Assembly (NCBI RefSeq): GCF_046119375.1
Contig: NW_027362761.1
Coordinates: 550,684,001 to 550,748,000 of the forward strand
Direction of reading: 5' to 3'
DNA from: Phyllobates terribilis
Lineage: Eukaryota
Length of the DNA: 64,000 bases
The stretch's first letter is position 1, and the number at the start of each line of letters is the position of its first letter. Under the pieces are notes generated by a model. It was not told where the DNA came from, made no database searches, and saw only the letters and a program-made list of their open reading frames with translations. The position numbers were made by a program, and so were the translations under genes. Below, in pieces: positions 2,354 to 59,480 of this stretch.

Positions 2354-3425
2354 CCAAAGGCCCAAAACTGGATAGTACAGCGATTTGACCCGTGGAACTG
2401 CGAAACCACACTGGGATGTTGGGCCTACACAAGACTATTTTCAACAGATATATTTTTGTGTCACAACAGTCAGGAGACACTGCTGTTTTTCTTTACGGAA
2501 AAAACTACCAAAACCTGAATAATAGAGATTTTTTACCGTGGGATGGCAAAACCACAGTTATTGTTTACTGGGGTATACCACACTTTTTTAAATAGAGATA
2601 TTTGCAGCTGAACAGTGAGCGACACACTCAAACTGCTTTTTTTTTTAGATACAAATGGCCCAAAATGGATAATACAGAGGTTTGAACTGTGGAAGTGCAA
2701 AACAACACTTCTGTTTCCCTAGCCTACACCAGACTATTTTCAACAGTTATATTTGTGTCTGAAAAATCAGAGACACGCTTTTTTTTTGGGGGGGGGGGGG
2801 GGACACACCAAAAGGTTAATAAGACGGGTATTTGTACAGTGTGAAGGAGGAAAAAAAAGGAGGATTTAGATGAAAAAAAAAGGATTTTTCCTTGCCTCCG
2901 ACACCTGGTGCTAAGTCCAGCAATTTCATCAACAGGAGCACACAGGACTGTAATGCAGCATTTGCTGGTATAACCACTGTGTCTCCTATATAGCCTGCCT
3001 GCCTGGTATCTGGGATGGATATTAGTCCTGAAAAGGACTGTTTGTTTGTTCTGGCAGCCTTTACAGACCCTACATTAACTATTTCGCAGTTTATATCTCT
3101 CCCTAAATCAGCAGCGCTGTCCCTACACTGTCTAATCCGGAGCGACTGTGTCCAAGATGGCGGTGCTCCGTTTTAAATACTCGAGGTGACGCTGTGTGGC
3201 CAGCCAATCACTGTAATGCCCACAACCAACATGGCTGCAGCATTACAGTGACTGGCTGGCAATCCCTGCAAGTTTATTGGCTCTGTAAAGAGCGCCAAAC
3301 ATGCAGGGCGGAGACCCGAGCTCCCGCCCGAGTAACCCGGAAATGCTCGGTGCTCGCCGAACATTCCGAGAAGCATGATGCTCGGGCGAGTACCAAGCAG
3401 TGTCGAGCATGTTCGCTCAACAATA
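2354..3425. mobile_element. hAT DNA transposon right end (copy 1)
   Basis: Contains about 3 degenerate ~150-bp repeats and a YY1/CCAAT segment. Ends GCTCAACAATA, a one-mismatch match to the TIR GCTCAACACTA. Collinear with 4300-5806. Confidence 0.8.
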
Positions 3426-3722
3426 ATAATCGTCACTCACCATCTTGGTGGACTCCTCAAAGTTAGTCAGGATGGTACATATGTCAGACATCCAAGTACA
3501 CTCCTGAGGTCTTATGTGTGGCGTCTGACCTGAATATCAACGGCCAAGTTGCAGCTGGTACTCCTCAACTGCTCTCTTCTGCTCACAAATCCTTTGCAAC
3601 ATCTGGAGGGTAAAGTTCCAACGTGTGTGGACATCACACACCAGTCGGTGTGCCGGAAGCTGCAAACACTGCTGCAACACAGCAAGGGCGGCGGAAGCTG
3701 TAGCCGACTTGCGAAAATGAGC
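3426..3722 (-). pseudogene. hAT transposase internal fragment
   Basis: The translation LVCDVHTRWNFTLQMLQRICEQKRAVEEYQLQ aligns with IICDLPTRWNSTLHMLERLCEQQAAVMEYQLQ of the transposase at ~50740-50860 (hAT TRWNS motif). Confidence 0.85.
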
Positions 3723-4290
3723 TGACAGGCTCTGCCTTTGCTCACCGCTCCGGCTGTCCTGCCCTGCTCTGCCTTTGCTCACAGCTCCGGCGGTCTCGCC
3801 CTGCTCTGCCTTGCTCACCGCTCCGGCGGTCTCGCTCTGCTCTGCTTGACTACCGCATCTGCGGTTATGTTCCTGAGTCCCAGACTGTACTGGACCTTAT
3901 TCAGTCTGTGCTCCATCCTGCTAGTGCCTCCATGTCTGTACTTCAGTCGTTCTTGCCAGTACCCCCTGCCTGCATACCAGTCGTGCTTACCAGTACCCGC
4001 CTGTCTGCATACCAGTCGTGCCTGCCTATACCCACCAGTCAGTGTGCCAGCCTAACCTGCCTGTTCCTGTATTCCCCGGTGTGGGTCAACAGCCGTGTCC
4101 GGGGTCTGACCTGGAGTAGCACCTGGTCCCTCTGCTCGGTACCTCCTTGGTGCACGGCGTCGTAGCCGTCGTGTGACCTTGGTCGGATTGGGTTGATACT
4201 TAGTTACGCCCCTCCAGGCACTCTCCGGTTCAAGGCACAGAGGGGTCACTAAACACACACACGCCAGTCAGTCCGGGCGTGTGCATAACA
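3723..4290 (+). mobile_element. 3' fragment of an LTR (same family as 28780-30663)
   Basis: Collinear with 30190-30660, including the GCTCTGC-rich VNTR and the CCTGCCAGTACCC repeats. Ends in TAACA. Confidence 0.8.
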
Positions 4291-5806
4291 CTTACACTCG
4301 CACTATCAATGGAAAAAGGGTAATAAAAAGGAGATTAGAACCGTAGAAGAGGAAAACCACAGTTCTATTTCTCTGGCCTACACCAGAATCTTTTAAACAG
4401 ATATATTTGTGTCTGAACACTGAGCGAGACACTCAATTTTTTTATTTTTAAGGAAAAAAGGCAAAAAGGTGGATAATACTGAGATTTGAACCGTGGAACT
4501 GCAAAACCACAGTTATAGTTATGTGGCCTACACCAGAATCTTTTAAACAGATATATTTGTGTCTGAACAGTCAGGCAGACACTATCACTGTTTTTTTTTA
4601 CGGAAAAAAGGCCAAAAGATGGATAATACTGAGATATGAAACTTGGAACTGCAAAACCACAGTTCTAGTTATCAGGCCTACACCAGAATCATTTAAACAG
4701 ATATATTTGTGTCTGAACAGTCAGCGAGACACTATTACTGGTTTTTTTTACGGAAAAAAGGCCAAATGCGGGATAATACTGAGATTTGAACCGTGGAACT
4801 GCAAAACCACAGTTCTAGTTATCTGGCCTGCACCAGAAATCTTTTAAACAGATATATTTGTGTCTGAACAGTCAGGGAGACACTATTAAAGTTTGTTTTA
4901 CGGAAAAAAGGCCAAAAGCTGTATAATACAGAGATTTGAACCGTGGAACTGCAAAACCACAGTTCTAGTTATCTGGCCTACACCAGAATCTTTTAAACAG
5001 ATATATCTGTGTCTGAACAGTCAGGGAGACACTATTACTGTTTTTTTATGGAAAAAAGGCCAAAAGCTGGATAATACAGAGATTTGAACCGTGGAACTGC
5101 AAACCACAGTTCTAGTTATCTGGCCTACACCAGAATATTTTAAACAGATATATTGGTGTCTGAACAGTCACAGACACACTCAATTTTTTTTGGGGGGGGA
5201 GAAAAAATACCAAAAGGTTAATAAGACGCGTATTTGTACAGTCTGACTGAGGGAAAAAAAAATACAGGATTTAGATGAAAAAAAAAAGGATTTTTCCTGG
5301 CCCCTCAGACCGAGGGGTAAGACGAGCAATTTGACCAGCAGGAGCACACAGGACTGTAATGCACTGTTTGTTGGTATAACCACTGCGTCTCCTATACAGC
5401 CTGCCTGCCTGCCTGATATCTGGGATGGATATTAGCCCTGAGAAGGACTGTTTGTTTGATTTTGCAGGCTTTAGAGACCCTACACTACCTATTTCACACT
5501 ATATATCTCTCCCTAACTCAGCAGACTAAGCCTACACTGTCTGATCCCGGGCGACTGTGTCCAAGATGGCGGCGCCCGGTTTTAAATACTCGAGGTGACG
5601 CTGTGCGGCCAGCCAATCACTGTAATGCCCACAAACAACATGGCTGTGATATTACAGTGACCGGCTGGCAATCCCTGCATGTTCATTGGCTCTGTACCGA
5701 GCTCCCGTCCGAGTAACCCGGAAATGCTCGGTGCTCGCCGAATATCCCGAGTAGTGAGATGCTCGAACGAGTACCGAGCAGTATCGAGCATGCTCGCTCA
5801 ACACTA
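4291..5806. mobile_element. hAT DNA transposon right end (copy 2)
   Basis: Ends with an exact TIR GCTCAACACTA (5796-5806), identical to 53787-53797. Has CTCG/CGAG-rich subterminal repeats and carries the 150-bp array. Confidence 0.88.
4310..5180. repeat. ~150-bp tandem repeat, about 6 copies
   Basis: GGAAAAAAGG recurs at ~4452, 4602, 4752, 4902 and 5050. The unit includes GAACCGTGGAACTGCAAAACCACAGTTCTAGTTAT...CCTACACCAGAATC. Confidence 0.93.
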
Positions 5807-28779: not shown

Positions 28780-30663
28780 TGTAACATCCCTGGTGGCATG
28801 CTGGCATGGTTTACCACCTCCCACCATGCAAGACCGCCATCTTACCTATCAATCCAGGCTGCACACTTTGCTCCAGTACCTGCTGTGTCTCTTGTCTAAT
28901 TGCTTAGGGCGCGGCGTGGCTACTGCCTGATTCTTATAGTTACTGTGTGCACACTCCTAATGCCTCCCCAGCCTATTGCTGTGAGTCACTGGATACTTAA
29001 ACCCCCTCCACCCTGTAGGGGGTTCCTGAGCAACACTTTCATTCAGTGTGTTCTGTGCAACTGAGTTGCCAGGTCCTTTCCTGTATCTTGTCTGTTCCGC
29101 CACCCTTGGGGCTGTATACCCAGGCATGTTTCCTGTATCTGTGACTTCTAGTCTGTTTCTGCCACCCTGGGGGCTGAGTTCCCAGGCTCGTTCCTGTATC
29201 TTGTTCCTGGTTCAGTTCCTGTCTGAACAGTGTCCTAGCCCGTTACCTGTTTGTCTCTATGTCTGAACCTTCCCTTTTCCTGCAGTGTCTGAACCTGCAC
29301 CTAACTCCAACTCGTTGTCTCTGTACTTCTGTTTGTGAGTTTAGTGTCCACTCGCTACTTCATTGTAAGTACCTTGTGTGTATCTGGTTCTGCTTGTCCC
29401 GTTTCCCTCCCTCAGTATCTACCTCCTGTGTTCTAACTATCTTCCTGTATTTTCCAGTCTGTTCCATGTGAACAGAGCCCTGTCCTGTCTGCCTGCACCT
29501 TCTGCTCTGTTCTGCTCTGCTTGTTCACCGCACCAGTGGGTTTTGTTCTGCTCTGCTCTGCTTGTTCACCTCACTTGCGGTTCCGCTCTGCTCTGCTTGT
29601 TCACCGCACCTGCAGTTCCGCTCTGCTCTGCTTGTTTACCGCACCTGCAGTTCCGCTCTGCTCTGCTTGTTCACCGCACCTGCGGTTCCGCTCTGCTCTG
29701 CTTGTTCACCGCACCTGCGGTTCCGCTCTGCTCTGCTTGTTCACCGCACCTGCGGTTCCGCTCTGCTCTGCTTGTTCACCGCACCTGCGATTCCGCTCTG
29801 CTCTGCTTGTTCACCGCACCTGCGGTTCCGCTCTGCTCTGCTTCTTCACCGCACCTGCGGTTCCGCTCTGCTCTGCTTGTTCACCGCACCTGCAGTTCCG
29901 CTCTGCTCTGCTTGTTCACCGCACCTGCGGTTCTGCTCTGCTGTGCTTGTTCACCGCACCTGCGGTTCCACTATGCTCTGCTAGTTCACCGCACCTGCGG
30001 TTTTGCTCCGCTTTGCTTGTTCACCGCACCTGTGGTTTTGCTTCGCTCTGCTTGTTCACCGCACCTGCGGTTTTATTCCGCTCTGCTTGTTCACTGCACC
30101 TGCGATTTTGCTCCGCTCTGCTTGTTCACCGCACCAGCGGTTTCGCTCTGCTCTGCTTGTTCACCACACCGGCGGTTTTGCTCTGCTCTGCTTGTTCACC
30201 ACATCAGTGGTTTCACTCCGCTCTGCTGTCCACCGCACCTGCGGCTCCGTTCCTGTGTCCCAGTCTGTACTGGTCCCTATCCTGCCTGCGTTCCTACCTG
30301 CCAGTACCCGCCTGTCTGCATGCCAGCCGTGCCTGCCAGTGCCCACCTGTCTGCATATCTGCCGTGCCTGCCAATACCCACCTGTCTTCATATCAGCCGT
30401 GCCTGCCAGTACCCACCTGTCTGTATGCCAGCCTAACCTGCCTGTTCCTGCATTCCCCGGTGTGGGTCAACAGCTGTGACCAGGGTCTGACCTGGAGTAG
30501 CACCTGGTCCCTCTGCTCGGTTCCTCCCATTTTCACGGAGTCGACTGAGCTGCCTTGTGACCTTGGTCGGACCAAGTTGATACTTAGTTACGCCCCTCCA
30601 GGCACTCTTTGGTTCAAGGTCCAGTGGGATCACTAATCAATCTCACGCCAGTCAGTCAGGGCA
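28780..30663 (+). mobile_element. Solo LTR (1884 bp) with internal VNTRs
   Basis: TG...CA termini with a perfect 5-bp TSD ATGAG (28775-28779 and 30664-30668). No coding sequence inside. Confidence 0.85.
29495..30245. repeat. 35-bp minisatellite, about 21 copies
   Basis: Unit TCACCGCACCTGCGGTTCCGCTCTGCTCTGCTTGT. A second 35-bp unit (GCCGTGCCTGCCAGTACCCACCTGTCTGCATATCA-like, about 4 copies) follows at ~30290-30430. Confidence 0.97.
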
Positions 30664-39260: not shown

Positions 39261-41015
39261 TTGGAATAGTTGGATTCTTTACTTTTCTTAAGGCCCATCA
39301 TTTGGCCAACAGCCTTCTCAGCTGACTCTCCTTTTCAGTGAAGCACTCCTGTGTTCTCTATGAGAAAGCCTCTGGCTGACACATTGGCTCAGCTACATGA
39401 GTACAATGAAATCAGACATACCCAATCAAGATCTGCCGTGACCACCAGTTGGCTGGTGGCCCCATACACATTAGTTTGTTGGTCGAAACTGTAGGTATTA
39501 GCAGGTTCAGCAAACTTTAATTTAATGTGTTTTGGGGGCCTTAAGTGAACTGCTTATCCATTATGGATTCTGATCTAACATGACTCTGATATTGCTCTTG
39601 GTCTCTCAATAGCTTGGACATTATCCTGTATTTTTATGCTCTTCAGTTCACTCCACCAGTCACCAACTAGTATGCAGAAGCAACCAGGGAATCCTTGGAG
39701 CAAAGTAAAAATCTTTGTTGAAAAGCCTATACCAAATCTGACTGTTGTAGCTTTTTAGAGGTGAAGAGAACCCTTTCAACAATGTAAGCCATTCTGAACA
39801 TTGTTGGCTTGACCACTAAGAACATGTATCGTCATTTTGTGACCTTTAAAAGTTAATAAAAGTTATTGAGTTGTTAACAACTTTGGAAGGACACTTTTCT
39901 TGGAACATACAAAGTTGTAAATGAATCACATATACTCATCAGTCTTCACATTATTAATAGGTCTTTTGATGGTAATGGGAATTTTTCTACAGATTACAAA
40001 AAAGTGTCAGACACCATTCCCGAGAATGTCTTCATGATTAGGAAACATTAGGTGAGAACAGGACTTGGTCTGGGGTAGGTAAAATATTTCACAGCAGTAA
40101 AAGACATCTAACATTTTGATATGTGAATCAAATTTTAGTTTTATAATATCTTCCTGAGATTGGAAATGCTCTTCAGCTTATTAAATCAATAGAAATGTTA
40201 AAGCTAGGTGGAACCCCAATTATGGATTAAACCTGGAAGGTTAGACACTGGGTCTACACAAGACAGGAACAATTTATTTTCCCCCCTTGCTTTTTGACAA
40301 GTAAATGTCAGCAGGCAACATCATCTGCTAGTCCCCGGCATAGGGCACCTGTTATAGAAAGATTATTAGTCTTGCATGTGTCAAAATCTTTATCATTTCA
40401 GATTTGATACAAAATTACTTTTGCTTAATGCATCCATTAACCTTGAACTATCAGCATGTGTTTTATGATCTAATGTTAAAGGATATTTTTTTTTATGTTC
40501 TCATGGAATCACTTTTAAACTTGTTCGGATGACAATAATTTTAGTCTGAAGTTATTGGAAGAATTAAAATTTACACTGTGTAAATCTATTATATAGCAAC
40601 GCTGAATTATATCTTTAAATGGTTTTGTTCACATTGAAGACATATGTCATCATCGTCTAACACAAGTTGGTTGCATTTAGTTATTAGTCGTTAGTAGTGT
40701 TGAGCGATACCTTCCGATATCGGGAAATATTGGATCGGATTGGATCGGACCGATACTGAAAAAGTATCGGATATCGCCGATTCCGATACCGGAAACCAAT
40801 GCAAGTCAATGGGACAGAAATATCGTAATGAAAATAAACCCTTTCTTTCCTTGTAGGTTAATTCTACATGAAGGAAAACAACTAAGAATAATGTAGAATG
40901 AATTGGGGGAGGTGGGGGAGACAATAAAGGCATAGAGGTTTAACCCAATCAAATGGAATAGCAGGAATTAATATTTTTTTTTAAGACGTTCTGAGTTACG
41001 GAAATATTGACTATG

Positions 41016-41955
41016 TTAAGTATTTTTATATTTTGTCAGATATTTATGTTTCACTACTTCCATGCTCTTCACCTTCTTTTTTACTTCTCCCACACTTTCT
41101 CCTTCATCATCCTCAGCATCAGCATCTTTTTCATCCACTTCTTCTTCACCTTCTTCATCTTCTTCTTCTTCACCTTCTTCATATTATTCTTTTTTTTACA
41201 TTCTTCATATTCTACTTCTTCATCTTCTTCATATTCTTCTTCTTCATCATATTCTTATTTGTGACAGGCATTCCTGTAGTTGTTATCTATAAAAGTTAGG
41301 ACATTACACCTTTCGTTCTGCCCGTCACAAAAGATTTACAACAAGATTTGTCCGCGTTCAGTTTGGCCTGCAGCAGCAGGTCTTTTCCAGGGGCACCACG
41401 AGGAGGAACGGACTCACCCCCATACACTGCTTAGTCATCTTCGGCTTATAATTTAGATATTATCTTTTGCTCTGATTTTTAGTCTTATGCTTAATGTTCT
41501 TCCGCTTTTTGTTCTGCAGCTTCTTGTACTTCTGCTTCTTGGTTTTCTGTCTCTTGTTCTTCTGTATCTTGGTGGTTGTCTTCTCTTCTTTGTCCTCTTG
41601 GTCTACTTCTTCAGGGTCATCTTCTTGATATTCTTCGGGGTGGTCTTCAGGGTCATCGTCTTCGGGGGTCCTCGTCTTCGGGGTCCTCATCTTCTTCGGG
41701 GTCCTCGTCTTCTTCGGGTTGGTCTTCAGGGTCCTCGTCTTCGGGGTCCTCTTCTTCTTCGGCGTGGTCTTCAGGGTCATCGTCTTCTTCGGGGTGGTCT
41801 TCAGGGTCCTCGTCTTCTTCGGGGTGGTCTTCAGGGTTCTCGTCTTCAGGGTCGTCGTCTTCGGGGTCCTCGTCTTCTTCGGGTTGGTCTTCAGGGTCCT
41901 CGTCTTCAGGGTCCTCGTCAGGGAGATCCAGAGTGATTACCAAGAACCATTTCAA
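41016..41955 (-). pseudogene. Frameshifted Glu/Asp-rich low-complexity ORF remnant(s) inside the hAT
   Basis: Minus-strand frames read EDPEDEDPEDQPEE..., EDNHQDTEEQETENQEAEVQEAAEQKAEEH* and EYDEEEEYEED...EEGEEEVDEKDADAEDDEGESVGEVKKKVK. Coding status not established. Confidence 0.4.
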
Positions 41956-41989
41956 AAAGCATGAACTTGGAAATGTAGCAGAAGGTACA

Positions 41990-44290
41990 AGAAGGCTGAG
42001 GAACTACCGAGGACCAGCTGACGTTACTGGAACCCGGATGGGTAGCAGAAGGTACAAGAGCCAATGGAACTACCGAGGACCAGCTGACGGTACTGGAACT
42101 CGGTTATTAAGCAGGAGGTACCTGTGCCAGAAAGCACTACCAAGGACCAGCAGACGTTGGTGGAACTTGGATACCGAGAAGGAGGCACCTAAACCAAAGG
42201 CACTGCCGAGAACCAGCTGACGGTACTGGAACCCGGATGGGTAGCAGAAGGTACAAGAGCCAATGGAACTACCGAGGACCAGCTGACGGTACTGGAACTC
42301 GGTTACTAAGCAGGAGGTACCTGTGCCAGAAAGCACTACCAAGGACCAGCAGACGTTGGTTGAACTTGGATACCAAGAAGGAGGCACCTAATCCAAAGGC
42401 ACTGCCGAGAACCAGCTGACAGTACTGGAACCCAGATGGGTAGCAGAAGGTACAAGAGCCAATGGAACTACCGAGGACCAGCTGATGGTACTGGAAAACG
42501 ATTACTAAGGAGGAGGTACCTGTGCCAGAAACCACTACCAAGGACCAGAAGACATTGGTGGAACTTTGATACCGAGAAGAAGGCACCTAATCCAAAGGCA
42601 CTGCAGAGAACCAGCTGACGGTACTGGAACCCGGATGGGTAGCAGAAGGTACCCATTTAAAGAAAAGTTTCAAGGCCACGAGCCGGCCGCAGTTACCAAA
42701 ACCCACAGTCCTACAGGGGGTGCTTGTCCTTTTGGCACTATGGAACCAGCCTTCATTGCCAGATCCCGCAGCCCACATAGGAGTCACCTAAACTGCAGGC
42801 ACCATAGAGTCGGCTAACCCGACCGCAACACGACAGGACAACGCATTGGAGGCAAAGTGACGTTGACACTACCCAGAAACAGCTGGCGTGCTGGAACCAG
42901 GCTGGGCAGGAGGGAGTACCCGTGCCAAAGACACTGCCGAGAACCAGCTGACGGTACTGGAACCCGGATGGGTAGCAGAAGGTACAAGAGCCAATGGAAC
43001 TACCAAGGGCCAGCTGATGGTACTGGAACTCGGTTACTAAGCAGGAGGTACCTGTGCCAGAAAGCACTACCAATGACCAGCAGACGTTGGTGGAACTTGG
43101 ATACCGAGAAGGAGGCACCTAATCCAAAGGCACTGCCGAGAACCAGCTGACAGTACTGGAACCCGAATGGGTAGCAGAAGGTACAAGAGCCAATGGAACT
43201 ACCGAGGACCAGCTGATGGTACTGGAACTTGGTTACTAAGCAGGAGGTACCTGTGCCAGAAAGCACTACCAAGGACCAGCAAACGTTGGTGGAACTTGGA
43301 TACCGAGAAGGAGGCACCTAATCCAAAGGCACTGCCGAGAACCAGCTGACGGTACTGGAACCCGGATGGGTAGCAGAAGGTACCCATGTAAAAAAAAGTT
43401 TCAAGGCCGCGAGCCGGCCGCAGTTACCAAAACCCACAGTCCTACAGGGAGTGCTTGTCCTATTGGCACTATGGAACCAGCCTTCATTGCCAGATCCCGC
43501 AGCCCACATAGGAGTCACATAAACTGCAGACACCATAGAGTCGGCTAACCCGACCGCAACATGACAGGACAACGCATTGGAGGCAAAGTGACATTGACAC
43601 TACCCGGAAACAGCTGGCGTGCTGGAACCAGGCTGGGCAGGAGGGAGTACCCGTGCCAAAGACACTGCCGAGAAACAGCTGACGGTACTGGAACCCGGAT
43701 GGGTAGCAGAAGGTACAAGAGCAAATGGAACTACCGAGGACCAGCTGACGGTACTGGAACCCGGATGGGTAACAGAAGGTACAAGAGCCAATGTAACTGC
43801 CGAAGACCAGCTGACGGTACTGGAACTCGGTTACTAAGCAGGAGGTACCTGTGCCAGAAAGCACTACCAAGGACCAGCATACGTTGGTGGACCTTGGATA
43901 CCGAGAAGGAGGCACCTAATCCAAAGGCACTGCCGAGAACCAGCTGACGGTACTGGAACCCGGATGGGTAGCAGAAGGTACACATGTAAAAAAATGTTTC
44001 AAGGCCGCAAGCTGGCCGCAGTTACCAAAACCCACAGTCCTACAGGGGGTGCTTGTCCTATTGGCACTATGGAACCAGCCTTCATTGACAGATCCCACAG
44101 CCCACATAGGAGTCACCTAAACTGCTGGCACCATAGAGTCGGCTAACCCGACCGCAACGCGACAGGACAACGCATTGGAGGCAAAGTGACATTGACACTA
44201 CCCGAAAACAGCTGGCGTGCTGGAACCAGGCTGGGCAGGAGGGAGTACCCGTGCCAAAGACACTGCTGGGAAACAACTGGCGGTGCTGGA
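41990..44290. repeat. Nested tandem array: 66/67/66-bp subunits forming a 199-bp unit, interleaved with a 333-bp segment
   Basis: Subunits start CCAGCTGACGGTACTGGAAC. The 199-bp period shows in the ORF track (42070, 42269, 42468). The higher-order segment recurs 731 and 598 bp apart. Confidence 0.93.
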
Positions 44291-44291
44291 A

Positions 44292-47200
44292 CCCAGGGTA
44301 AATACTAAAAACAGAGTGGAGCCAGAGGCGTAATTGGAGCAAGTTTTAAATCAGTAGTACAGTGGATGCGGACCAAGCAGGAGAATTTGACGGACACAGA
44401 GCAGGGGAACAGCTGACGTTACTGAACCCCAATAACACTGGAGCAAGCGTTGACTGTGCAGACGGCACTTCTGAGCAGCAACTAGCGGTATTGGAGCCCA
44501 GGGTAAATACTAAAAACAGAGGAGCCAGAGGTGTAATTGGAGCAAGTTTTAAATCAGTAGTAGAGTGGATGTGGACAAAGCAGGAGAATTTGCCGGACAC
44601 ACAACAGGGGAACAGCTGACGTTACTGAACCCCAAAAACACTGGAGCAAGCATTGACTGTGCAGACGGCACTTCTGAGCAGCAAATGGCGGTATTGGAGC
44701 CCAGGGTAAATACTAAAAACAGAGGAGCCAGAGGTGTAATTGGAGCAAGTTTTAAATCAGTAGTACAGTGGATGTGGACAAAGCAGGAGAATTTGCCGGA
44801 CACACAGCAGGGGAACAGCTGACGTTACTGAACCCCAATAACACTGGAGCAAGCGTTGACTGTGCAGATGGCACTTCTGAGCAGCAACTAGCGGTATTGG
44901 ATCCCAGGGTAAATACTAAAAACAGAGGTGTAATTGGAGCAAGTTTTAAATCAGTAGTACAGTGGATGTGGACAAAGCAGGAGAATTTGCCGGACACACA
45001 GCAGGGGAACAGCTGACTTTACTGAACCCCAATAACACTGGAGGAAGCGTTGACTGTGCAGACGGCACTGCTGAGCAGCAGCTAGCGAAATTGGAGCCCA
45101 GGGTAAATATTAAAAACAGAGGAGCCAGAGGTGTAATTGGAGCAAGTTTTAAATCAGTAGTACAGTGGATGTGGACGAAGCAGGAGAATTTGCCGGACAC
45201 ACAGCAGGGGAACAGCTGACGTTACTGAACCCCAATAACACTGGAGCAAGTGGTGACTGTGCAGACGGTACTTCTGAGCAGCAACTAGCGGAATTGGAGC
45301 CCAGGGTAAATACTAAAAACAGAGGAGCCAGAGGTTTAATTGGAGCAAGTTTTAAATCAGTAGTACAGTGGATGTGGACAAAGCAGGAGAATTTGCCGGA
45401 CACACAGCAGGGGAACAGCTGACGTTACTGAACCCCAATAACACTGGAGCAAGCGTTGACTGTGCAGATGGCACTTCTGAGCAGCAACTAGCGGTATTGG
45501 ATCCCAGGGTAAATACTAAAAACAGAGGAGCCATAGGTGTAATTGGAGCAAGTTTTAAATCAGTAGTACAGTGGATGTGGACAAAGCAGGAGAATTTGCC
45601 GGACACACAGCAGGGGAACAGCTGATGTTTCTGAATCCCAAAAACACTGGAGCAAGCGTTGACTGTGCAGACGGCACTTCTGAGCAGCAACTAGCGGTAT
45701 TGGAGCCCAGGGTAAATACTAAAAACAGAGGAGCCAGAGGTGTAATTGGAGCCAGTTTTAAATCAGTAGTACAGTGGATGTGGACAAAGCAGGAGAATTT
45801 GCCGGACACACAGCAGGGGAACAGCTGACGTTACTGAACCCCAATAACACTGGAGCAAGCGTCGACTGTGCAGATGGCACTTCTGAGCAGCAACTAGCGG
45901 TATTGGATCCCAGGGTAAATACTAAAAACAGAGGAGCCAGAGTTGTAATTGGAGCAAGTTTTAAATCAGTAGTACAGTGGATGTGGACAAAGCAGGAGAA
46001 TTTGCCGGACACACAGCAGGGGAACAGCTGATGTTACTGAACCCCAAAAACACTGGAGCAAGCGTTGACTGTGCAGACGGCACTTCTGAGCAGCAACTAG
46101 TGGTATTGGAGACCAGGGAAAATACTAAAAACAGAGGAGCCAGAGGTGTAATTGGAGCCAGTTTTAAATCAGTAGTACAGTGGATGTGGACAAAGCAGGA
46201 GAATTTGCCGGACACACAGCAGGGGAACAGCTGACGTTACTGAACCCCAATAACACTGGAGAAAACGTTGACTGTGCAGACGGCACTTCTGAGCAGCAAA
46301 TAGCGGTATTGGAGCCCAGGGTAAATACTAAAAACAGAGGAGCCAGAGGTGTAATTGGAGCAAGTTTTAAATCAGTAGTACAGTGGATGTGGACAAAGCA
46401 GGAGAATTTGCCGGACTCACATCAGGGGAACAGCTGACGGTCCTGAACCCCAATAACACTGGAGCAAGCATTGACTGTGCAGACGGCACTTCTGAGCAGG
46501 AACTATCAGTATTGGAGCCCAGGGTAAATACTAAAAACATAGGAGCCAGAGGTGTAATTGGAGCACGTTTTAAATCAGTAGTACAGTGGATGTGGACAAA
46601 GCAGGAGAATTTGCCGGACACACAGCAGGGGAACAGCTGACATTACTGAACCCCAATAACACTGGAGCAAGCGTTGACTGTGCAGATGGCACTTCTGAGC
46701 AGCAACTAGCGGTATTGGAGCCCAGGGTAATTACTAAAAACAGAGGTGTAATTGGAGCAAGTTTTAAATCAGTAGTAGAGTGGATGTGGACAAAGCAGGA
46801 GAATTTGCCGGACACACAGCAGGGGAACAGCTGACGTTACTGAACCCCAATAACACTGGAGCAAGCGTTGACTGTGCAGACGGCACTTCTGAGCAGCAAC
46901 TAGCGGAATTGGAGCCCAGGGTAAATACTAAAAACAGAGGAGCCAGAGGTGTAATTGGAGCAAGTTTTAAATCAGTAGTACAGTGGATGTGGACAAAGCA
47001 GGAGAATTTGCCGGACACACAGCAGGGGAACAGCTGACATTACTGAACCCCAATAACACTGGAGCAAGCGTTGACTGTGCAGATGGCACTTCTGAGCAGC
47101 AACTAGCGGAATTGGAGCCCAGGGTAAATACTAAAAACAGAGGAGCCAGAGGTGTAATTGGAGCAAGTTTTAAATCAGTAGTACAGTGGATATGGACAAA

Positions 47201-49560
47201 GCAGGAGAATTTGCCGGACACACAGCAGGGGAACAGCTGACATTACTGAACCCCAATAACACTGGAGCAAGCGTTGACTGTGCAGATGGCACTTCTGAGC
47301 AGCAACTAGCGGAATTGGAGCCCAGGGTAAATACTAAAAACAGAGGAGCCAGAGGTGTAATTGGAGCAAGTTTTAAATCAGTAGTACAGTGGATGTGGAC
47401 AAAGCAGGAGAATTTGCCGGACACACAGCAGGGGAACAGCTGACGTTACTGAACCCCAATAACACTGGAGCAAGCGTTGACTGTTCAGATGGCACTTCTG
47501 AGCAGCAACTAGCGGTATTGGATCCCAGGGTAAATACTAAAAACAGAGGAGCCAGAGGTGTAATTGGAGCAAGTTTTAAATCAGTAGTACAGTGGATGTG
47601 GACAAAGCAGGAGAATTTGCCGGACACACAGCAGGGGAACAGCTGATGTTACTGAACCCCAAAAACACTGGATCAAGCGTTGACTGTGCAGACGGCACTT
47701 CTGAGCAGCAACTAGCGGTATTGGAGCCCAGGGTAAATACTAAAAACAGAGGAGCCAGAGGTGTAATTGGAGCCAGATTTAAATCAGTAGTACAGTGGAT
47801 GTGGACAAAGCAGGAGAATTTGCCGGACACACAGCAGGGGAACAGCTGACGTTACTGAACCCCAATAACACTGGAGCAAGCGTTGACTGTGCAGACGGCA
47901 CTTCTGAGCAGCAACTAGCGGAATTGGAGCCCAGGGTAAATACTAAAAACAGAGGAGCCAGAGGTGTAATTGGAGCAAGTTTTAAATCAGTAGTACAGTG
48001 GATGTGGACAAAGCAGGAGAATTTGCCGGACACACAGCAGGGGAACAGCTGACATTACTGAACCCCAATAACACTGGAGCAAGCGTTGACTGTGCAGATG
48101 GCACTTCTGAGCAGCAACTAGCGGAATTGGAGCCCAGGGTAAATACTAAAAACAGAGGAGCCAGAGGTGTAATTGGAGCAAGTTTTAAATCAGTAGTACA
48201 GTGGATGTGGACAAAGCAGGAGAATTTGCCGGACACACAGCAGGGGAACAGCTGACATTACTGAACCCCAATAACACTGGAGCAAGCGTTGACTGTGCAG
48301 ATGGCACTTCTGAGCAGCAACTAGCGGAATTGGAGCCCAGGGTAAATACTAAAAACAGAGGAGCCAGAGGTGTAATTGGAGCAAGTTTTAAATCAGTAGT
48401 ACAGTTGATGTGGACAAAGCAGGAGAATTTGCCGGACACACAGCAGGGGAACAGCTGACGTTACTGAACCCCAATAACACTGGAGCAAGCGTTGACTGTT
48501 CAGATGGCACTTCTGAGCAGCAACTAGCGGTATTGGATCCCAGGGTAAATACTAAAAACAGAGGAGCCAGAGGTGTAATTGGAGCAAGTTTTAAATCAGT
48601 AGTACAGTGGATGTGGACAAAGCAGGAGAATTTGCCGGACACACAGCAGGGGAACAGCTGATGTTACTGAACCCCAAAAACACTGGATCAAGCGTTGACT
48701 GTGCAGACGGCACTTCTGAGCAGCAACTAGCGGTATTGGAGCCCAGGGTAAATACTAAAAACAGAGGAGCCAGAGGTGTAATTGGAGCCAGATTTAAATC
48801 AGTAGTACAGTGGATGTGGACAAAGCAGGAGAATTTGCCGGACACACAGCAGGGGAACAGCTGACGTTACTGAACCCCAATAACACTGGAGCAAGCGTTG
48901 ACTGTGCAGACGGCACTTCTGAGCAGCAACTAGCGGAATTGGAGCCCAGGGTAAATACTAAAAACAGAGGAGCCAGAGGTGTAATTGGAGCAAGTTTTAA
49001 ATCAGTAGTACAGTGGATGTGGACAAAGCAGGAGAATTTGCCGGACACACAGCAGGGGAACAGCTGACATTACTGAACCCCAATAACACTGGAGCAAGCG
49101 TTGACTGTGCAGATGGCACTTCTGAGCAGCAACTAGCGGAATTGGAGCCCAGGGTAAATACTAAAAACAGAGGAGCCAGAGGTGTAATTGGAGCAACTTT
49201 AAAATCTGTAGTAGTGAGAATGTGAACATAGCAGGAGAAATTGCCTTCCGCACAGCAGGGGAACAGCTGACGTTACTGAACCCCAATAACAGGGCAGCAA
49301 GTGTTGACTGTGCAGACGGCACTTCCGAGCGCCAACTGGCCGTGTTGGAGCTCCGTGATAATACTGAAAACAGAGGAGCCAGAGGTGTAATTGGAGCAAC
49401 TTTAAAATCTGTAGTAGTGAGAATGTGGACAGAGCAGGAGAAATTGCCGTCCGCACCGCAGGGGAACAGCTGACGTTACTGAACCCCAATAACATGGCAG
49501 CAAGTGTTGACTGTGCAGACGGCAGTTCCAAGTGCCAACTGGCAGTGTTGGAGCTCAGGA
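44292..49560. repeat. 203-bp tandem satellite: 24 near-identical units plus ~1.5 diverged units
   Basis: ORF-track starts from 44362 to 49013 step by 203 bp (194 bp for two units carrying a 9-bp deletion). Confidence 0.98.
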
Positions 49561-49617
49561 ATTACAGTTCAGGTGGTAGAATATGAACACAACAGGAGAC
49601 CATTGCCAACCAATTAT

Positions 49618-52600
49618 TTATTCTGGAAGAGGACTGGCAAATGCATGCGAGATCCAGGCCTTGTTCATTTTGAGAAAAGTAAGCCGGTCAACATTATCGG
49701 AGGATAGTCGCATGCGACGGTCTGTTAGTATACCACCTGCGGCACTAAAGACGCGTTCTGATAATACACTAGCAGCAGGGCAAGCTAGCACCTCCAATGC
49801 ATACTGACTAAGCTCTGGCCATGTATCCAGCTTACAGACCCAAAACTTGAAGGGAGAAGAGCCGTCTGGGAGTACACTAAGAGGGCAAGACATGTAGTCT
49901 GTCACCATCTGACGGAAACGTTGCCTCCTGCTGACTGGAGCCATCTGTGATGGTGTAGACATTTGTGGCGGCGGGGACACAAAACTTTGCCACATTTCGG
50001 CCATACTGGTCTTGCCTTGTGCTGAGGCGCTGCTTCTGCTCCCTCTTTGTGCAGAGGTTCCTCCACTGCCTCGACGCACTGAGCTGCTTTGTAAAGCACT
50101 AGCAGCACTGCTCTCGGTTGGAATGGAAAACATGATGGAATGCACCAGTGCGTCTTGGTACTCCCGCATTTTACGCTCCCGGTTCAACGGTGTTATGAGG
50201 CTTTGTAAGTTGTCCCGGTAGCGAGGATCTAGGAGGGTGGACACCCAATAATCAGCCGTGTTGAGAATGTGGGCGATGCGGCGGTCGTTTCTCAGGCACT
50301 GCAGCATGAAATCAACCATGTGCTGCAGACTGCAAACTGGCCAAGAAACGCTGTCCCCTGCTTGAGGCGTGATCTCTGCCTGCTCTGCATCACCCCACCC
50401 TCGCTCTAGATACTGACTACTAGAGCATTGTGTACCTCCCTCCTCTGGACAGATGTCTTCCTCATCCATTGACTCCTCCTCATCCTCCTCACAAAGTGAC
50501 CCCTGCCTAGGCCTTTGTGGGGAACCACGTTGCGCAGACTGTAGAGAAGCAGATGGCATTTGTGACTCCTCATCCTCCACCTCTTAGAAAACCTCGTCCC
50601 TTAGTGCTTGCAGTGTTTTTTCAAGCAGGCAGGTAAGGGGGATGGTCATGCTGACTAGTTCATCATCTCCATCCACGTGGAATAATCGAAGGCACGCAAA
50701 ACGTGGCAAATGTCATTCATAGAGGCCCACTCAGTGGTGGTGAAGTGTGAACGGCGCGCACTGCTGCAGCTGGTACTCCATTACTGCTGCCTGCTGCTCA
50801 CACAACCTCTCCAACATATGTAACGTTGAATTCCACCTGGTGGGTAGGTCACATATGATGCGATGTTCCGGAAGAATCGGCGCTGCAGAGCTGCAATGCG
50901 TGATCTTGCGTTGCTGGAACGCCGCAAGTGAGCGCACTCTATGCGGACCTTGTGAAGCAGTGCATCAAGATCCAGATAGTCCCTCAAAAAACTCTACACG
51001 ACCAAGTTGAGCACATGTGCCAGACATGGGATGTGAGTGAGGTTGCCTAGGCCCAGAGCTGCCACCAGATTTCGGCCATTGTCACACACTACCATGCCTG
51101 GCTGGAGATTCGCTGGCACAAACCACACGTCGTTCTGCTGCTTGATGGCATTCCAGAGCTCCTGCGCTGTGTGACTTCGATTCCCCAAATAAATTAATTT
51201 TAATACGGCCTGTTGACGTTTGGCCACGGCTGTGCTCATATCGGTCATCATAACAGGTAACCATTCATGGGTCGATGTGGAGGTAGACCGTGACGGCTCC
51301 TGCAGCGCTGATTCAGAGGAACTGGAGTATGAGGAAGAGTCAATGTGTACAGACTGGATTCCTGCAATCCTTGGAGTTGGCAGAACACGTACAGCGCCAC
51401 TCTCAAGATCTGTACCCGGCTCCACAACATTTACCCAATGGGCAGTGAGGGAAAGGTATCGTCCCTGTCCATGCTTACTGGTCCACGCATCGGTGGTCAG
51501 GTGGACCTTGCTACTGACGGTGTTTTGTAGCGCATGTTTAATTTTTCCCTCCACATGATGTTGCAGAGCAGGGACGGCTTGCCTGCTGAAATAAAAGCGG
51601 CTGGGCACGTTGTATTGTGGGACTGCCAATGCCATAAAGTTACAGAAGGTGTCAGTCTCCACCAGCCTGAATGATATCATTTCAAGGGCCAGTAGTTTAG
51701 CAATGCCAGCATTCAGAGCCTGTGCTCGGGGGTGGTTTGCAGAGTATGGGCGCCTTTTCTCCCATGCCTGTGCTACGATGGCTGTAGACTGGCCTGGGAG
51801 TGTGAGGATGACTGGGAAAGTGGTGTTGTGGGTGGAATTACACTGTGTCTCTGTACAACAGTGCCAGAGATTCTTCCATGGCGATCCTGTGAGGAAGCCG
51901 AACCAGCTGTGTGTGAGCTGGAGGAAGAGGCTACAACACGAGCTGAAGAGGTGGTAGGTGGCGCTGTAGGTTGGCCTAGGTCTTCAGTGTGTTTTTGTAA
52001 CTCCACCACGTGCTTGGTCCGCACATGTTTCCACATATTTGTGGTATTGAGGTTGCTGACACTTTTCCCTCTTTTCACCTTCTGATTACACAGCTTGCAT
52101 TTGACAAAGCAAATGTCATCTGCAACTGTGTCAAAAAAGGACCAGGCACTGCAAGTCTTGGGATTTTGGAAGAGCCATGCTCCTAATGGGTGCCGAAGTG
52201 GAGGCTACAGGCAACCAAGTCTGCCCCCTCCCTCTCCCTCCTTTCTGGTCTGTTCGGGGAATCTCTTCCTCAGAGCTGCTCCCACCACCTTCCTGTCCCT
52301 CATGCCATGATGGGTCAAGGACCTCATCATCTACACCACCCTCTTCAAACAACTGCTTCTCCTGGGTAGTCTCGACAGCACAGTACGCACCAGAAAGTGG
52401 CACCTGAGTCTCATCCTCAGATGCGTACTGAGGTGTGCTGCTGACCATAGGCACTGGCCCACCCGCCTCTTCAGATTCAGAGAGACAAAACGGTTGCGCA
52501 TCACTGCATACTACCTCTTCTTCAAATTCTCGAATTCTGCTTGGCTGGCCCCCTCTTTCCAAGCCAAGAGATTCAGAGAACAGAAGTAGAGATGGCTCCT

Positions 52601-52961
52601 GTCCAGGGCTCTCTGACTGCCTGGGCAATTTGGCAGGTGGTGAAGAGACAGATGGGTGCTCTTCAGTGCTCAGGACCTGAGAGGATCTGGAACTAATTGA
52701 AGTTGATGCGTTAGCTGCCATCCATCCGACAACGGCTTCAATTTGGTCCTCCCGCAGCAGTGGGGTACGGCTAGCTCCTATAAAGCTGCGCATAAAGGAC
52801 TGTTCCCTGGTAAAACTGGGGGATGCTGAGTCACTGGTGCCCGCAGCAGGCACAGAATCCCCAGGTCCTCTCCCTGCAGGCACAGAATCTTCACGTCCTC
52901 TCCCAGCAGAAACTCCACGCCCACGACCACAACCACATGCCTTACTCCCTGCCTTCTTCAT
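49618..52961 (-). pseudogene. hAT (Ac/ZBED-like) transposase, disrupted
   Basis: BED finger AWSFF...CKLC...HVRTKH (~52020-52160), TTDAWTS (D1), CDNGRN (D2), CLAHVLNLVV (CxxH), TRWNS, and a C-terminal dimerisation domain WPELSQYALEVLACPAASVLSERVFSAAG (catalytic E). Frameshifts near 52165, 51777 and 50865, a TAG at 50994-50996, and further indels at ~50590-50730. Confidence 0.95.
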
Positions 52962-53520
52962 CTTGGTAGACTGATAAAGATAGGCAGAAAAGTACTAAGG
53001 GCTTAGTGTGCTTATTCCTGAACAGCTGCTAACAGGTATAAGAAACACAAATTTTATAAAGTGTGGACTAGACTTTAATATGAGCTAATGTGGCCTACAC
53101 AACTGTAAAGTGGAGTGTTTGGTGAACATTATTTAGTTTTTTTTTGTCACAAAAAGACACTGGATGTGCTAGTGTGTTTGGAACCAATTTAGCTGAATAC
53201 GGATGGAACCACCACACTAATAGGAGATATCAGGAAAAATTATGAATTGGCAAAAAAGGACAATGTATGAGGCAGTGACACACACTGAGTGCACTACAAC
53301 CAGACGTGGTTGAAGCACACACTACAGGGTGAGCTGCACTCACACACACACAGACCTTGCAGAAAGCGGTGAACAGCACAGAGAACTGTGCACTAGCGCT
53401 GCAAGGCACAGCGATTTATAAAGTAGCTTGGGTAAAGCAGAATAGACCAAATAGGTAGCTAAAACTGTCCCTCAGAACAACAGCGTCCTATCCCTAACTG
53501 AATTCACAGCAGAGTGAGCT

Positions 53521-53580
53521 CAAAATGGCGGCGGCGGCTTTCATAGTGCATCATGACATCATTTTAGCAGCCAATCACAG
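53521..53580. promoter_or_regulatory. YY1-type motif plus CCAAT box upstream of the transposase
   Basis: CAAAATGGCGGC at 53521-53532 and CCAAT at 53571-53575. The same pair occurs at 3153/3204 and 5562/5613. Confidence 0.5.
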
Positions 53581-54175
53581 CCATGCCATTAGTTAAGATG
53601 CCTACATGCCTAACAGGATGTGCCCACACTTCTTAGGATCCTCATTGGCTGAATAAAATGAAACTGGCTCATTACATTATGGGAACTTCCGATTCCGGTA
53701 TACGATATTGAAAAAGTATGGGAATTAAGTATCGGAATTCCGATACCGCGAATATCGGCCGATACCCGATATTTCAGTATCGGAATGCTCAACACTAGTC
53801 GTTAGTCAACTAATGATCTTTTCGTGAAAGAAAGTTTCCAGAAGTTTGAATGACTAGGCGTAAAGCTCATTCACCAGACAGTCCATCATGTTTTCAATAA
53901 TTGTTCAAGCATCAACCTACTTCTTTTAATGGTAATGGCCACCTTTATTGTCTCAATAAGCAAACATATCTAAACAGGTCTACCTGTCAAAATTTCAGAC
54001 AAGTCCCAAAAGGACCTGAGAAAGAAACAGAGTGCGGAGGTTCCATCAATGACTTCAAAGGCAGTTATCTCAGATACTTCCAAGTACTGGGTCTAGTTAA
54101 TGGGAACCTGACATATGCAGGATGTATCAGACGCTGGCTGTATGGTGACAGTGCTCTCCCTACGTACATGTATAT

Positions 54176-58149: not shown

Positions 58150-59480
58150 AAAATGCTCACTACTTCCCTAGATGAATTCCTTGAGAGGTGTAGTTTACAA
58201 AATGGGGTCACTTGTGGGGGTTTCTGCTGTTTTGGCATGTCAGCGACTCTTCAAATGTGACATGGTGTCTGCTGCCTATCCCAGCCAACATAGCGCTTCT
58301 TTCTCTTCCGAACCCTGCCGTACACCAAAGCAGTGGTTTTCCCCCACATATGGGGTATCGGCGTACTCAAGAGAAATTGTACAGCAAATTTCATGGTGCA
58401 ATTTATCCTGTTACCCTTATGATAATCCAAAATTAGGGAATGAAAAACATTTTTTATGGGAAAAATGTGAAAATTTTATTTTTACGGCTCAATATTATAA
58501 ACTTCTGTGAAGCAGCTGGGGGTGCAAGGTGCTCACCACACATCTAGATAAGTTCCCTAAGGGGTATAGTTTCCAAAATGGTGGCACTTGTGGGGGGTTT
58601 CCACTGTTTAGGCACATTAGGGGCTCCCCAAATGTGACATGGCGTCCGCTAATTATTCAAACAAATTTTACATTCAAAAAGTCAAATGGCGCTCCTTCCC
58701 TTTCAAACCCTGCCATGTGCCCAAACAGTAATTTGCCTCCACATATGGGGTATCAGCGTGTTCAGGAGAAATTGCATAACAAATTTCACGGTGCAATTTA
58801 TCCTATTACCCTTATGATAATGCAAAATTAAGGGATGAAAAATGGTTTTGTGGGAAAAATGTGAAAATTTTATTTTTACAGCTCAATATTATAAACTTCT
58901 GTGAAGCACCTTGGGGTTCAAGGTGCTCACCACACATCTAGATAAGTTCCCTAAGGGGTCTAGTTTCCAAAATGGTGTCACTTGTGGGGGGTTTCCACTG
59001 TTTAGGCACATCAGGAGCTCTCCAAACGCAACATGGCGTCCGCTAATTATTCAGACAAATTTTACATTCAAAAAGTCTAATGGCGCTCCTTCCCTTCCGA
59101 ACCCTGCCGTGCGCCCAAACAGTGGTTTTCCCTCACATATGGGGTATCAGCACGCTCAAGAGAAATTGCACAAAAAAATTTGGGGTCCATTTCATGTTAC
59201 CCCTGTGAAAATAAAAAAATTGGGTCTAAAGTAACATTTTTGTGAAAAAAGTTAAATGTTAATTTTTTTCTTCCACATTCCAAAAATTCCTGTGAAGCAC
59301 CTGAAGGGTTAATAAAGTTCTTGAATGTGGTTTTGAGCACCTTGAGGGGTGCAGTTTTTAGAATGCTGTCACTTTTGGGTATTTTCTGTCATAAAGACCC
59401 CTCAAAGTGACTTCAAATATGATGTGGTCCCTAAAAAAATGTTTTTGTAAATTTTGTTGGAAAAATGAGAAATCGCTGGT
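58150..59480. repeat. ~394-bp internal tandem repeat, about 3.5 copies
   Basis: CTAGATAAGTTCCCTAAGGGG at 58544 and 58938, with diverged copies at ~58168 and ~59330. Confidence 0.85.

What the first reader, a model, noticed from the sequence alone, without database searches (positions are those of the whole stretch)
40695..53797. 13.1-kb hAT transposon that is about 65% internal tandem-repeat cargo
Seen: exact TIRs and an exact 8-bp TSD enclose a ~3.3-kb transposase pseudogene and, downstream of it, ~8.5 kb made of a 203-bp satellite, a nested 66/199-bp array and an acidic low-complexity tract. The transposase has at least 5 lesions while the ends are pristine. Known: typical autonomous hATs are about 3-5 kb. 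Inference: either the element was mobilised in trans with its cargo, or the arrays expanded in place. Either way it is a transposon acting as a satellite-DNA incubator or vector.
Basis: partly seen in the sequence, partly recalled or inferred. Interest (0 to 1): 0.75.

Follow-up and report, generated by a model that had tools for sequence, protein, structure and literature searches.

The report
Dead frog hAT transposon carrying satellite arrays
This is a real 13.1-kb "cut-and-paste" (hAT) transposon in a poison-frog-type genome, with a decayed enzyme gene and two thirds of its length made of tandem repeats that the family carries from place to place; it is a clear example of a known way that transposons spread satellite-like DNA.

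Summary
Window 40695-53797 is one hAT insertion with exact 11-bp terminal inverted repeats, an exact 8-bp target duplication (GTCGTTAG) and TCCGATA-type motifs under both ends. A 3.3-kb transposase gene lies on the minus strand.

- **Dead gene:** it has 7 lesions, five frameshifting deletions and two stop codons. Long contigs of the same family from three coded organisms lack every one of them. The copy's private substitutions look neutral.
- **Arrays:** 8.4 kb (64%) between the stop codon and the far end is tandem DNA. It comprises a 203-bp array of 26 units, 66/199-bp arrays nested in a roughly 600-730-bp macro-repeat, a 15/60-bp minisatellite and a CTT tract.
- **Carried or grown:** both. 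Contigs from two other organisms run from the transposase into the first bases of the 203-bp array, so that array belongs to the family. A 1015-bp five-unit block is duplicated with 2 differences, although the copy is about 1.4% diverged, so at least 1 kb grew in place.
- **Trans-mobilisation:** not needed to explain the data.

Transposon-borne arrays that seed satellites are well documented. This scan has already reported several hAT elements with arrays on other DNA of this genome. It is a new member of a known kind, of moderate to low interest.

The parts
40687..40694 (.). Left copy of the 8-bp target-site duplication GTCGTTAG
   Evidence: one of only two occurrences in the window, abutting the element end.
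40695..40705 (+). Terminal inverted repeat at the element's 3' end (relative to the transposase)
   Evidence: exact 11-bp match to the reverse complement of 53787-53797. It begins TAGTG, which fits the hAT YARNG end (from knowledge).
40706..40800 (.). 3' subterminal region with TCCGATA(T/C)CG-type short repeats, the presumed transposase-binding sites
   Evidence: the motifs cluster here and at the other end.
41123..41259 (.). CTT-rich microsatellite / 24-bp repeat
41471..41919 (.). 15/60-bp minisatellite whose minus-strand translation is acidic (PEDEDPED...). There is no start codon, it breaks off after about 100 codons, and there is no evidence of a gene
41975..44260 (.). 66/199-bp arrays nested in a macro-repeat: a 214-bp spacer plus array, starting at 42653, 43384 and 43983 (94-96% alike)
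44261..49559 (.). 203-bp tandem array, about 26 monomers. Inner monomers are 93-100% alike and edge monomers 82-87%. The unit is distantly homologous to the 66/199-bp unit
   Evidence: 67% identity over ~110 bp, z 8.6 against shuffles.
46797..49029 (.). Youngest part of the 203-bp array: the five-monomer block 46797-47811 is repeated at 47812-48826 with 2 differences in 1015 bp, and a further monomer (48827-49029) is identical
49617..49622 (-). AATAAA overlapping the transposase stop codon (consensus match only). The 203-bp array begins about 58 nt further on
49618..52961 (-). Transposase pseudogene, about 1128 codons if the breaks are bridged. Deletions lie at 52156 (14 bp), 51774 (1 bp), 50874 (4 bp), 50760 (17 bp) and 50668 (7 bp). 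Stop codons lie at 50996-50994 and 50586-50584
   Evidence: The sum of the frame shifts matches the observed frame path -3/-1/-3/-2/-3/-2.
49669..49899 (-). hAT C-terminal dimerisation domain (PF05699)
   Evidence: E 9.2e-15, 54.7 bits against a cut-off of 21.4. (matches Hermes transposase chains, E about 2e-9).
52010..52147 (-). BED zinc finger (PF02892)
   Evidence: E 9.3e-10, 38.8 bits against a cut-off of 20.6.
53687..53786 (.). 5' subterminal region with the same TCCGATA-type short repeats
53787..53797 (-). Terminal inverted repeat at the element's 5' end
   Evidence: Contigs from other copies leave the window sequence at 53797, with unlike continuations (table 7).
53798..53805 (.). Right copy of the target-site duplication GTCGTTAG

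Best explanation
This is a single insertion of a member of an abundant, recently active hAT (Ac-like) transposon family of a dendrobatid-type frog. In this family the region between the transposase stop codon and the 3' end is filled with tandem arrays.

hAT excision and integration need only the ends and their subterminal binding motifs (established knowledge). The interior is therefore free to grow by slippage and unequal exchange, and whatever has grown is moved and multiplied with the element.

This copy most likely arrived about 11-12 kb long, already carrying most of its arrays. It then decayed neutrally: 7 disabling lesions and about 1.4% private substitutions, many at CpG. It also added at least 1 kb to its 203-bp array in place.

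Shown: the hAT identity, the single insertion, the private lesions, the family-wide transposase-to-203-mer junction, and the young duplication. Inferred: that the 66/199-bp and 15/60-bp arrays were also carried in, that the copy was intact when it inserted, and that the arrays have no function for the element.
For: - **Ends:** exact TIR and TSD, with subterminal motifs at both ends.
- **Protein:** BED and hAT dimerisation domains above Pfam cut-offs, a match to Hermes, and anuran hAT/ZBED-like relatives.
- **Abundance:** 75,814 short contigs of run X1 lie on 4.6 kb, 31,659 of them at least 99% alike. Long contigs lie at about 1.4-1.7% difference: X14 (three contigs of about 0.9-1.1 kb), X9 (one of 3872 bp) and X10 (up to 1408 bp). 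They carry extra letters at all five deletion sites and a sense codon at both stops.
- **Private stops:** the G at 50996 and the C at 50586 hold at least 98% of X1 depth.
- **Junction:** the X9 and X10 contigs both end at 49534, about 25 nt inside the array. That is where a 31-mer graph would branch if the junction is shared.
- **Satellite depth:** the 203-mer bins are 9-35 times as deep as the transposase bins in all four runs, the same order as 26 monomers per element.
- **Neutral decay:** 30 private substitutions fall 8/10/12 over codon positions, with 10 synonymous, 18 non-synonymous and 2 stops. Random expectation is 23% synonymous and 4% stops.
- **Growth in place:** the five-monomer blocks differ at 2 of 1015 positions, against about 28 expected if they predated the insertion.
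- **Older layers:** edge monomers are more diverged. Macro-repeat units differ by 4-6% and most monomers by 2-7%, more than the roughly 2.8% expected for post-insertion duplicates.
Against: - Only the transposase-to-203-mer junction and the right end could be tested in other copies. The left half (66/199-bp arrays, 15/60-bp repeat, left end) rests on the TSD and on divergence arguments.
- Contigs cannot give array length, so neither the 5.3-kb length nor the near-identical five-monomer blocks are verified against long reads.
- In run X1 (very short contigs) part of the depth at 51774 and 50874 agrees with the window. One or two deletions might therefore be shared by a sub-lineage.
- Gene conversion, rather than duplication, could make the five-monomer blocks alike.
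- No empty site was seen.
Confidence: 0.8

Rival explanations
1. The element inserted as an ordinary 4-5-kb hAT, and all 8.4 kb of arrays grew in place in this one copy afterwards.
For: The array is clearly dynamic. A 1015-bp block is duplicated with 2 differences, and several monomer clusters are at least 99% alike. The more diverged edge monomers fit growth from within.
Against: Contigs from two other coded organisms run from the transposase into the 203-bp array, and the 203-mer is very abundant in all four runs. Most monomers and the macro-repeat units differ by more than the roughly 2.8% expected for duplicates younger than this insertion.
Confidence: 0.07
2. The copy was already defective when it moved: a non-autonomous lineage mobilised in trans with its arrays.
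For: In X1, part of the depth at the 1-bp (51774) and 4-bp (50874) deletion sites agrees with the window (table 4). Contig breaks at 53169/53170 and 53675 suggest that the family has deletion derivatives sharing only the 5' end.
Against: All five deletions are absent from the long contigs of X14, X9 and X10. Both stops are private at 98% or more of X1 depth. The number of stops and the substitution pattern match neutral decay at about 1.4% divergence. Intact ends over 38 bp are expected by chance at that divergence.
Confidence: 0.12
3. Assembly artefact or composite: the array length, or the linkage of the two ends, is produced by mis-assembly of repeats, or two separate hAT ends happen to bracket a genomic satellite.
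For: Long tandem arrays with near-identical blocks are error-prone in assemblies. No raw long reads could be laid.
Against: The exact 8-bp TSD abuts both ends. Monomers carry distinct variant patterns throughout, including two 194-bp deletion variants. The two five-monomer blocks still differ at 2 sites. The transposase-to-array junction is seen in independent runs.
Confidence: 0.05
4. The arrays are kept because they serve the element, for instance as a spacer, a regulator of transposase expression or a small-RNA source.
For: Arrays in non-coding parts recur in hAT families of this genome: a second family in this window at 3405-5806, and earlier scan notes. That recurrence could hint at more than accident.
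Against: The array units show no similarity to the subterminal binding regions. There is no Rfam match and no long ORF. Units turn over quickly, and an AATAAA at the stop codon would end the mRNA before the arrays.
Confidence: 0.08

Closest known systems
Autonomous hAT elements (Ac, hobo, Hermes, Tol2)
   Same: 8-bp TSD, short TIR beginning TAGTG, subterminal short repeats, and a BED finger plus catalytic core plus C-terminal hAT dimerisation domain. The C-terminus matches Hermes chains.
   Different: It is 13.1 kb against about 3-5 kb (from knowledge). It has about 8.4 kb of tandem arrays after the stop codon and a roughly 270-residue low-complexity N-terminal extension. This copy is dead.
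Autonomous transposable elements with satellite-seeding arrays in their untranslated regions (Atenspm 5' UTR/ENSAT1; Ogre 3' UTR/PisTR-A), as tabulated in PMC9659126
   Same: Tandem repeats sit in the non-coding part of a coding-competent element family, are spread with it, and can expand.
   Different: Those are a plant CACTA element and an LTR retrotransposon. Here it is a vertebrate hAT with several nested array types. Independent long arrays outside the element were not shown here.
Tandem repeats riding on frog MITEs (Xmix/Xstir in Xenopus laevis; miDNA4 in X. tropicalis), cited in PMC9659126
   Same: An amphibian DNA transposon carries and spreads a tandem repeat that is homogenised within arrays.
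   Different: Those carriers are small non-autonomous MITEs. This family encodes its own transposase and carries kilobases of arrays.
Tetris foldback transposon of Drosophila virilis (PMC4079207) and Helitron/DINE central tandem repeats (PMC12628747)
   Same: Internal arrays of a DNA transposon are the building blocks of satellite-like DNA.
   Different: The superfamily and mechanism differ. In Tetris the repeats belong to the long TIRs. Here they show no similarity to the ends.
Other hAT elements with arrays in this same genome
   Same: Large hAT elements of a poison-frog-type genome in which much of the length is tandem DNA. One note describes an intact 14.3-kb copy that is about 65% satellite and may belong to the same family.
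   Different: I could not read those windows, so family identity is untested. In several of them the arrays lie in front of the transposase, whereas here they lie behind it.

Membership tests
hAT superfamily of DNA transposons | 8-bp target-site duplication | tested here: met
   GTCGTTAG lies on both sides, and these are the only two occurrences in 64 kb. It also fits the Ac-type nTnnnnAn pattern (pattern recalled from the literature; a single site is weak evidence).
hAT superfamily of DNA transposons | Short terminal inverted repeats (about 10-25 bp) beginning YARNG | tested here: met
   An exact 11-bp TIR, TAGTGTTGAGC. The consensus is recalled from knowledge.
hAT superfamily of DNA transposons | Transposase with the C-terminal hAT dimerisation domain | tested here: met
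   PF05699, E 9.2e-15, above the cut-off. Aligned to Hermes residues about 435-526.
hAT superfamily of DNA transposons | N-terminal BED zinc finger | tested here: met
   PF02892, E 9.3e-10, 38.8 bits, when read in frame at 51776-52156.
hAT superfamily of DNA transposons | RNase-H-like DDE catalytic core with insertion domain | tested here: inconclusive
   No Pfam model reached threshold on the core pieces. The core does align at 45-60% identity to anuran ZBED-like/hAT proteins, some of which carry PF27039 in precomputed tables. Catalytic residues were not mapped.
hAT superfamily of DNA transposons | Multiple copies with different flanks (evidence of mobility) | tested here: met
   Tens of thousands of contigs 95-100% alike lie on the transposase. 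Contigs leave the window at 53797 with unlike continuations.
Autonomous (coding-competent) copy | Uninterrupted transposase reading frame | tested here: not met
   Five frameshifting deletions and two stops.
Satellite DNA in the strict sense (long independent arrays outside the element) | The 203-bp unit forms arrays not bounded by the transposon | not testable with these tools
   Monomer-to-monomer joints and high depth were seen, but both are equally expected from arrays inside many element copies.

The most novel reading that the evidence does not exclude
Cut-and-paste hAT families of this frog lineage might systematically use their non-coding regions as array nurseries. Dispersed, element-borne arrays such as this 203-bp unit (about 5 kb per copy across very many copies) would then make up a sizeable, so far unannotated share of the giant genome. 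Alternatively, the arrays might be retained because they benefit the element.
Probability: 0.12. Interest if true: 0.6.

Novelty: new member of a known kind. Interest (0 to 1): 0.3.

Why it matters
Poison-frog genomes are several gigabases and rich in young transposons. hAT makes up 255 Mb of low-divergence repeats in Oophaga pumilio (PMC6278860) and 3.9% of the Dendrobates tinctorius assembly (PMC11152451). Neither paper mentions tandem arrays inside hAT elements.

This copy separates two layers within one locus. Arrays are inherited with the element, and arrays are added after insertion. That makes the transposon-to-satellite route concrete in a vertebrate. It also warns annotators that much 'satellite' or 'unclassified tandem' DNA in such genomes may be transposon interior.

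The mechanism is not new, and this scan has met the same pattern several times on other DNA of this genome.

Tried and rejected
DNA around related proteins, such as a Ranitomeya imitator gene model 81-91% identical over a short stretch, could not be fetched.
- **Metagenome scans.** Two exact-pattern scans of metagenome contigs, for the left end and for a 203-mer core, found nothing. That collection is not expected to hold frog DNA, so this says little.
- **Protein search of the arrays.** A word search with a 143-aa ORF across the spacer and 66-mers found no relatives. This is no evidence either way.
- **Arrays derived from the subterminal binding repeats?** Rejected. Local alignments of the 66-, 199- and 203-bp units to both ends score no better than shuffles.
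- **Acidic tract as a second gene?** Not supported. It has no start codon, breaks after about 100 codons, and is simply the translation of a 15/60-bp repeat.
- **Structured RNA in the element?** No Rfam family reached threshold.
- **Other copies in the window?** None was found. Only a 110-bp, 72% match to a different hAT fragment appeared.
- **Copy number.** I made no estimate, because the summed contig depth is not a copy number.
- **Expression.** I made no claim, because run X14 is only guessed to be RNA.
- **Mended transposase.** Pieces were searched apart by reference.
Full report
**1. Is it there?** Yes.

- The sequence TAGTGTTGAGC opens the element at 40695. Its reverse complement closes it at 53797, an exact 11-bp inverted repeat.
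- GTCGTTAG occurs exactly twice in the 64-kb window, at 40687-40694 and 53798-53805, touching the two ends.
- Beneath both ends lie clusters of TCCGATA(T/C)CG-type short repeats. Eleven of the window's 20 CCGATA/TATCGG hexamers lie within about 110 bp of the ends.
- There are no N runs in the window.

**2. The gene.** The transposase lies on the minus strand from ATG 52961 to TAA 49620-49618.

- Pfam finds the hAT dimerisation domain (E 9e-15). Read in its own frame, the BED finger is also found (E 9e-10).
- The C-terminus matches Hermes transposase chains.
- The nearest proteins are anuran hAT/ZBED-like models from Pristimantis, Engystomops, Phyllobates, Mantella and Dendrobates. Short stretches are 81-91% identical to Ranitomeya imitator models. 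The genome is therefore a dendrobatid-type frog. I cannot name the species.
- The reading frame runs -3, -1, -3, -2, -3, -2.

**3. What other copies show.** The runs were X1 and X14 from coded organism A, X9 from organism B and X10 from organism C.

- *Abundance and youth.* The family is very abundant and young. In X1, 75,814 short contigs were laid, 31,659 of them at least 99% alike. Long contigs of X14, X9 (one of 3872 bp) and X10 differ from the window at about 1.4-1.7% of positions.
- *Lesions.* These contigs hold extra letters at 52156 (14), 51774 (1), 50874 (4), 50760 (17) and 50668 (7). The window copy has deletions at those places. Their lengths modulo 3 reproduce the observed frame path exactly. 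The contigs also read a sense codon where the window has TAG (50996-50994) and TAA (50586-50584), and in X1 the family letter holds at least 98% of the depth at both places. That makes seven lesions. All are absent from the long family contigs, and the breaks together are consistent with a single open frame of about 1128 codons in the family.
- *Decay pattern.* Thirty substitutions private to this copy fall 8/10/12 on codon positions, with 10 synonymous, 18 non-synonymous and 2 stops. Random change would give 23% synonymous and 4% stops. At least seven are CpG transitions. This is neutral decay. At 1.4% divergence, two stops and a handful of indels are about what is expected. The 38 bp of TIRs plus TSDs are expected to be untouched more often than not. 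The contrast 'broken gene, pristine ends' therefore does not call for trans-mobilisation.
- *Caveat.* In X1, whose contigs are under 100 bp, part of the depth at 51774 and 50874 agrees with the window. A shared sub-lineage for those two deletions cannot be excluded.

**4. The arrays.** The list follows the element's own orientation, starting from the stop codon.

- An AATAAA overlaps the stop codon, a consensus match only. A 58-nt linker follows.
- The 203-bp array runs from 49559 down to 44261, about 26 monomers. Inner monomers are 93-100% alike and the edge monomers 82-87%.
- The 66/199-bp arrays (44260-41975) are nested in a larger repeat. A 214-bp spacer plus array starts at 42653, 43384 and 43983, and these units are 94-96% alike.
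- The 203-mer is a diverged relative of the 66/199 unit: 67% identity over about 110 bp, z 8.6 against shuffles. These arrays therefore form one evolving repeat lineage.
- A 15/60-bp minisatellite (41919-41471) reads as acidic peptide on the minus strand, but has no start codon and breaks after about 100 codons.
- A CTT tract lies at 41259-41123. About 430 bp of unique 3' end follows.
- In total 41123-49559 is 8437 bp, 64% of the element.

**5. Carried in or grown in place?** Both.

*Carried.* The X9 and X10 contigs run from the transposase through the stop codon and both stop at 49534, about 25 nt inside the array. That is where a 31-mer assembly graph would branch if the junction is shared by the family. 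The 203-mer bins are 9-35 times as deep as the transposase bins in all four runs, the same order as 26 monomers per copy. Depth is only a rough guide. Most monomer pairs and the macro-repeat units differ by 2-7%. That is as much as or more than the roughly 2.8% expected between duplicates made after this copy began to diverge.

*Grown.* Monomers 13-17 (46797-47811) and 18-22 (47812-48826) differ at 2 of 1015 positions, and monomer 23 is identical to monomer 18. About 28 differences would be expected had the duplication predated the insertion. At least 1.0-1.2 kb was therefore added, or homogenised, in place. Clusters of monomers at least 99% alike suggest up to about 2 kb.

*Untested.* The left half of the element could not be tested in other copies.

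**6. Mechanism.** hAT transposases act on the ends and their subterminal motifs (established knowledge). The interior is not constrained in length, arrays there can expand by slippage or unequal exchange, and every transposition spreads them. I found no sign that the arrays serve the element. They show no likeness to the binding-site regions, no Rfam family and no ORF with relatives.

**7. Comparison and novelty.** Transposon-borne arrays that seed satellites are well documented. Examples are Xmix/Xstir and miDNA4 in Xenopus, Atenspm, Ogre and Tetris (PMC9659126, PMC4079207), and Helitrons (PMC12628747). Papers on poison-frog genomes report abundant hAT but do not mention arrays inside them (PMC6278860, PMC11152451).

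This scan has already reported the pattern on other DNA of this genome. One note describes an intact 14.3-kb hAT that is about 65% satellite and may be the same family. I could not check that.

In this very window, a second hAT family piece (3405-5806) has a 150-bp array between its end and its transposase fragment.

**Verdict.** This is a new member of a known kind, with interest about 0.3.

Noticed in passing
window 3405-5806: A piece of a second, different hAT family on the minus strand. It has the same 11-nt end (5796-5806) but GCTCG-type subterminal motifs, a 150-bp tandem array of 5.6 units at 4331-5170, and a transposase fragment at 3405-3740 that is 88% identical to a Phyllobates terribilis ZBED4-like model. 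Here the array lies in front of the transposase, as in earlier scan notes.
   Followed up: partly
window 51054-51111: A stretch of about 58 bp inside the transposase gene has several-fold higher contig depth in all four runs. Consistent loose ends on both sides suggest that it is shared with another, more abundant repeat.
   Followed up: no
window 53169/53170 and 53675: Contigs of all runs break here, and consistent foreign continuations appear. This probably marks deletion derivatives of the family that keep only the outer 628 bp or 123 bp of the 5' end.
   Followed up: no
window 52131-52961 (-): A low-complexity, Gly/Arg- and Ser-rich N-terminal extension of about 270 residues precedes the BED finger. 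It includes a 30-bp repeat (52844-52909), has no Pfam match, and some family contigs have a 6-bp in-frame length difference at 52926.
   Followed up: no
window 29511-30433: Two adjacent 35-bp minisatellites (21 and 3.9 units) lie in a GC-rich, strongly strand-skewed stretch.
   Followed up: no
window 58293-59177: A 394-bp unit repeated 2.2 times at 87%.
   Followed up: no
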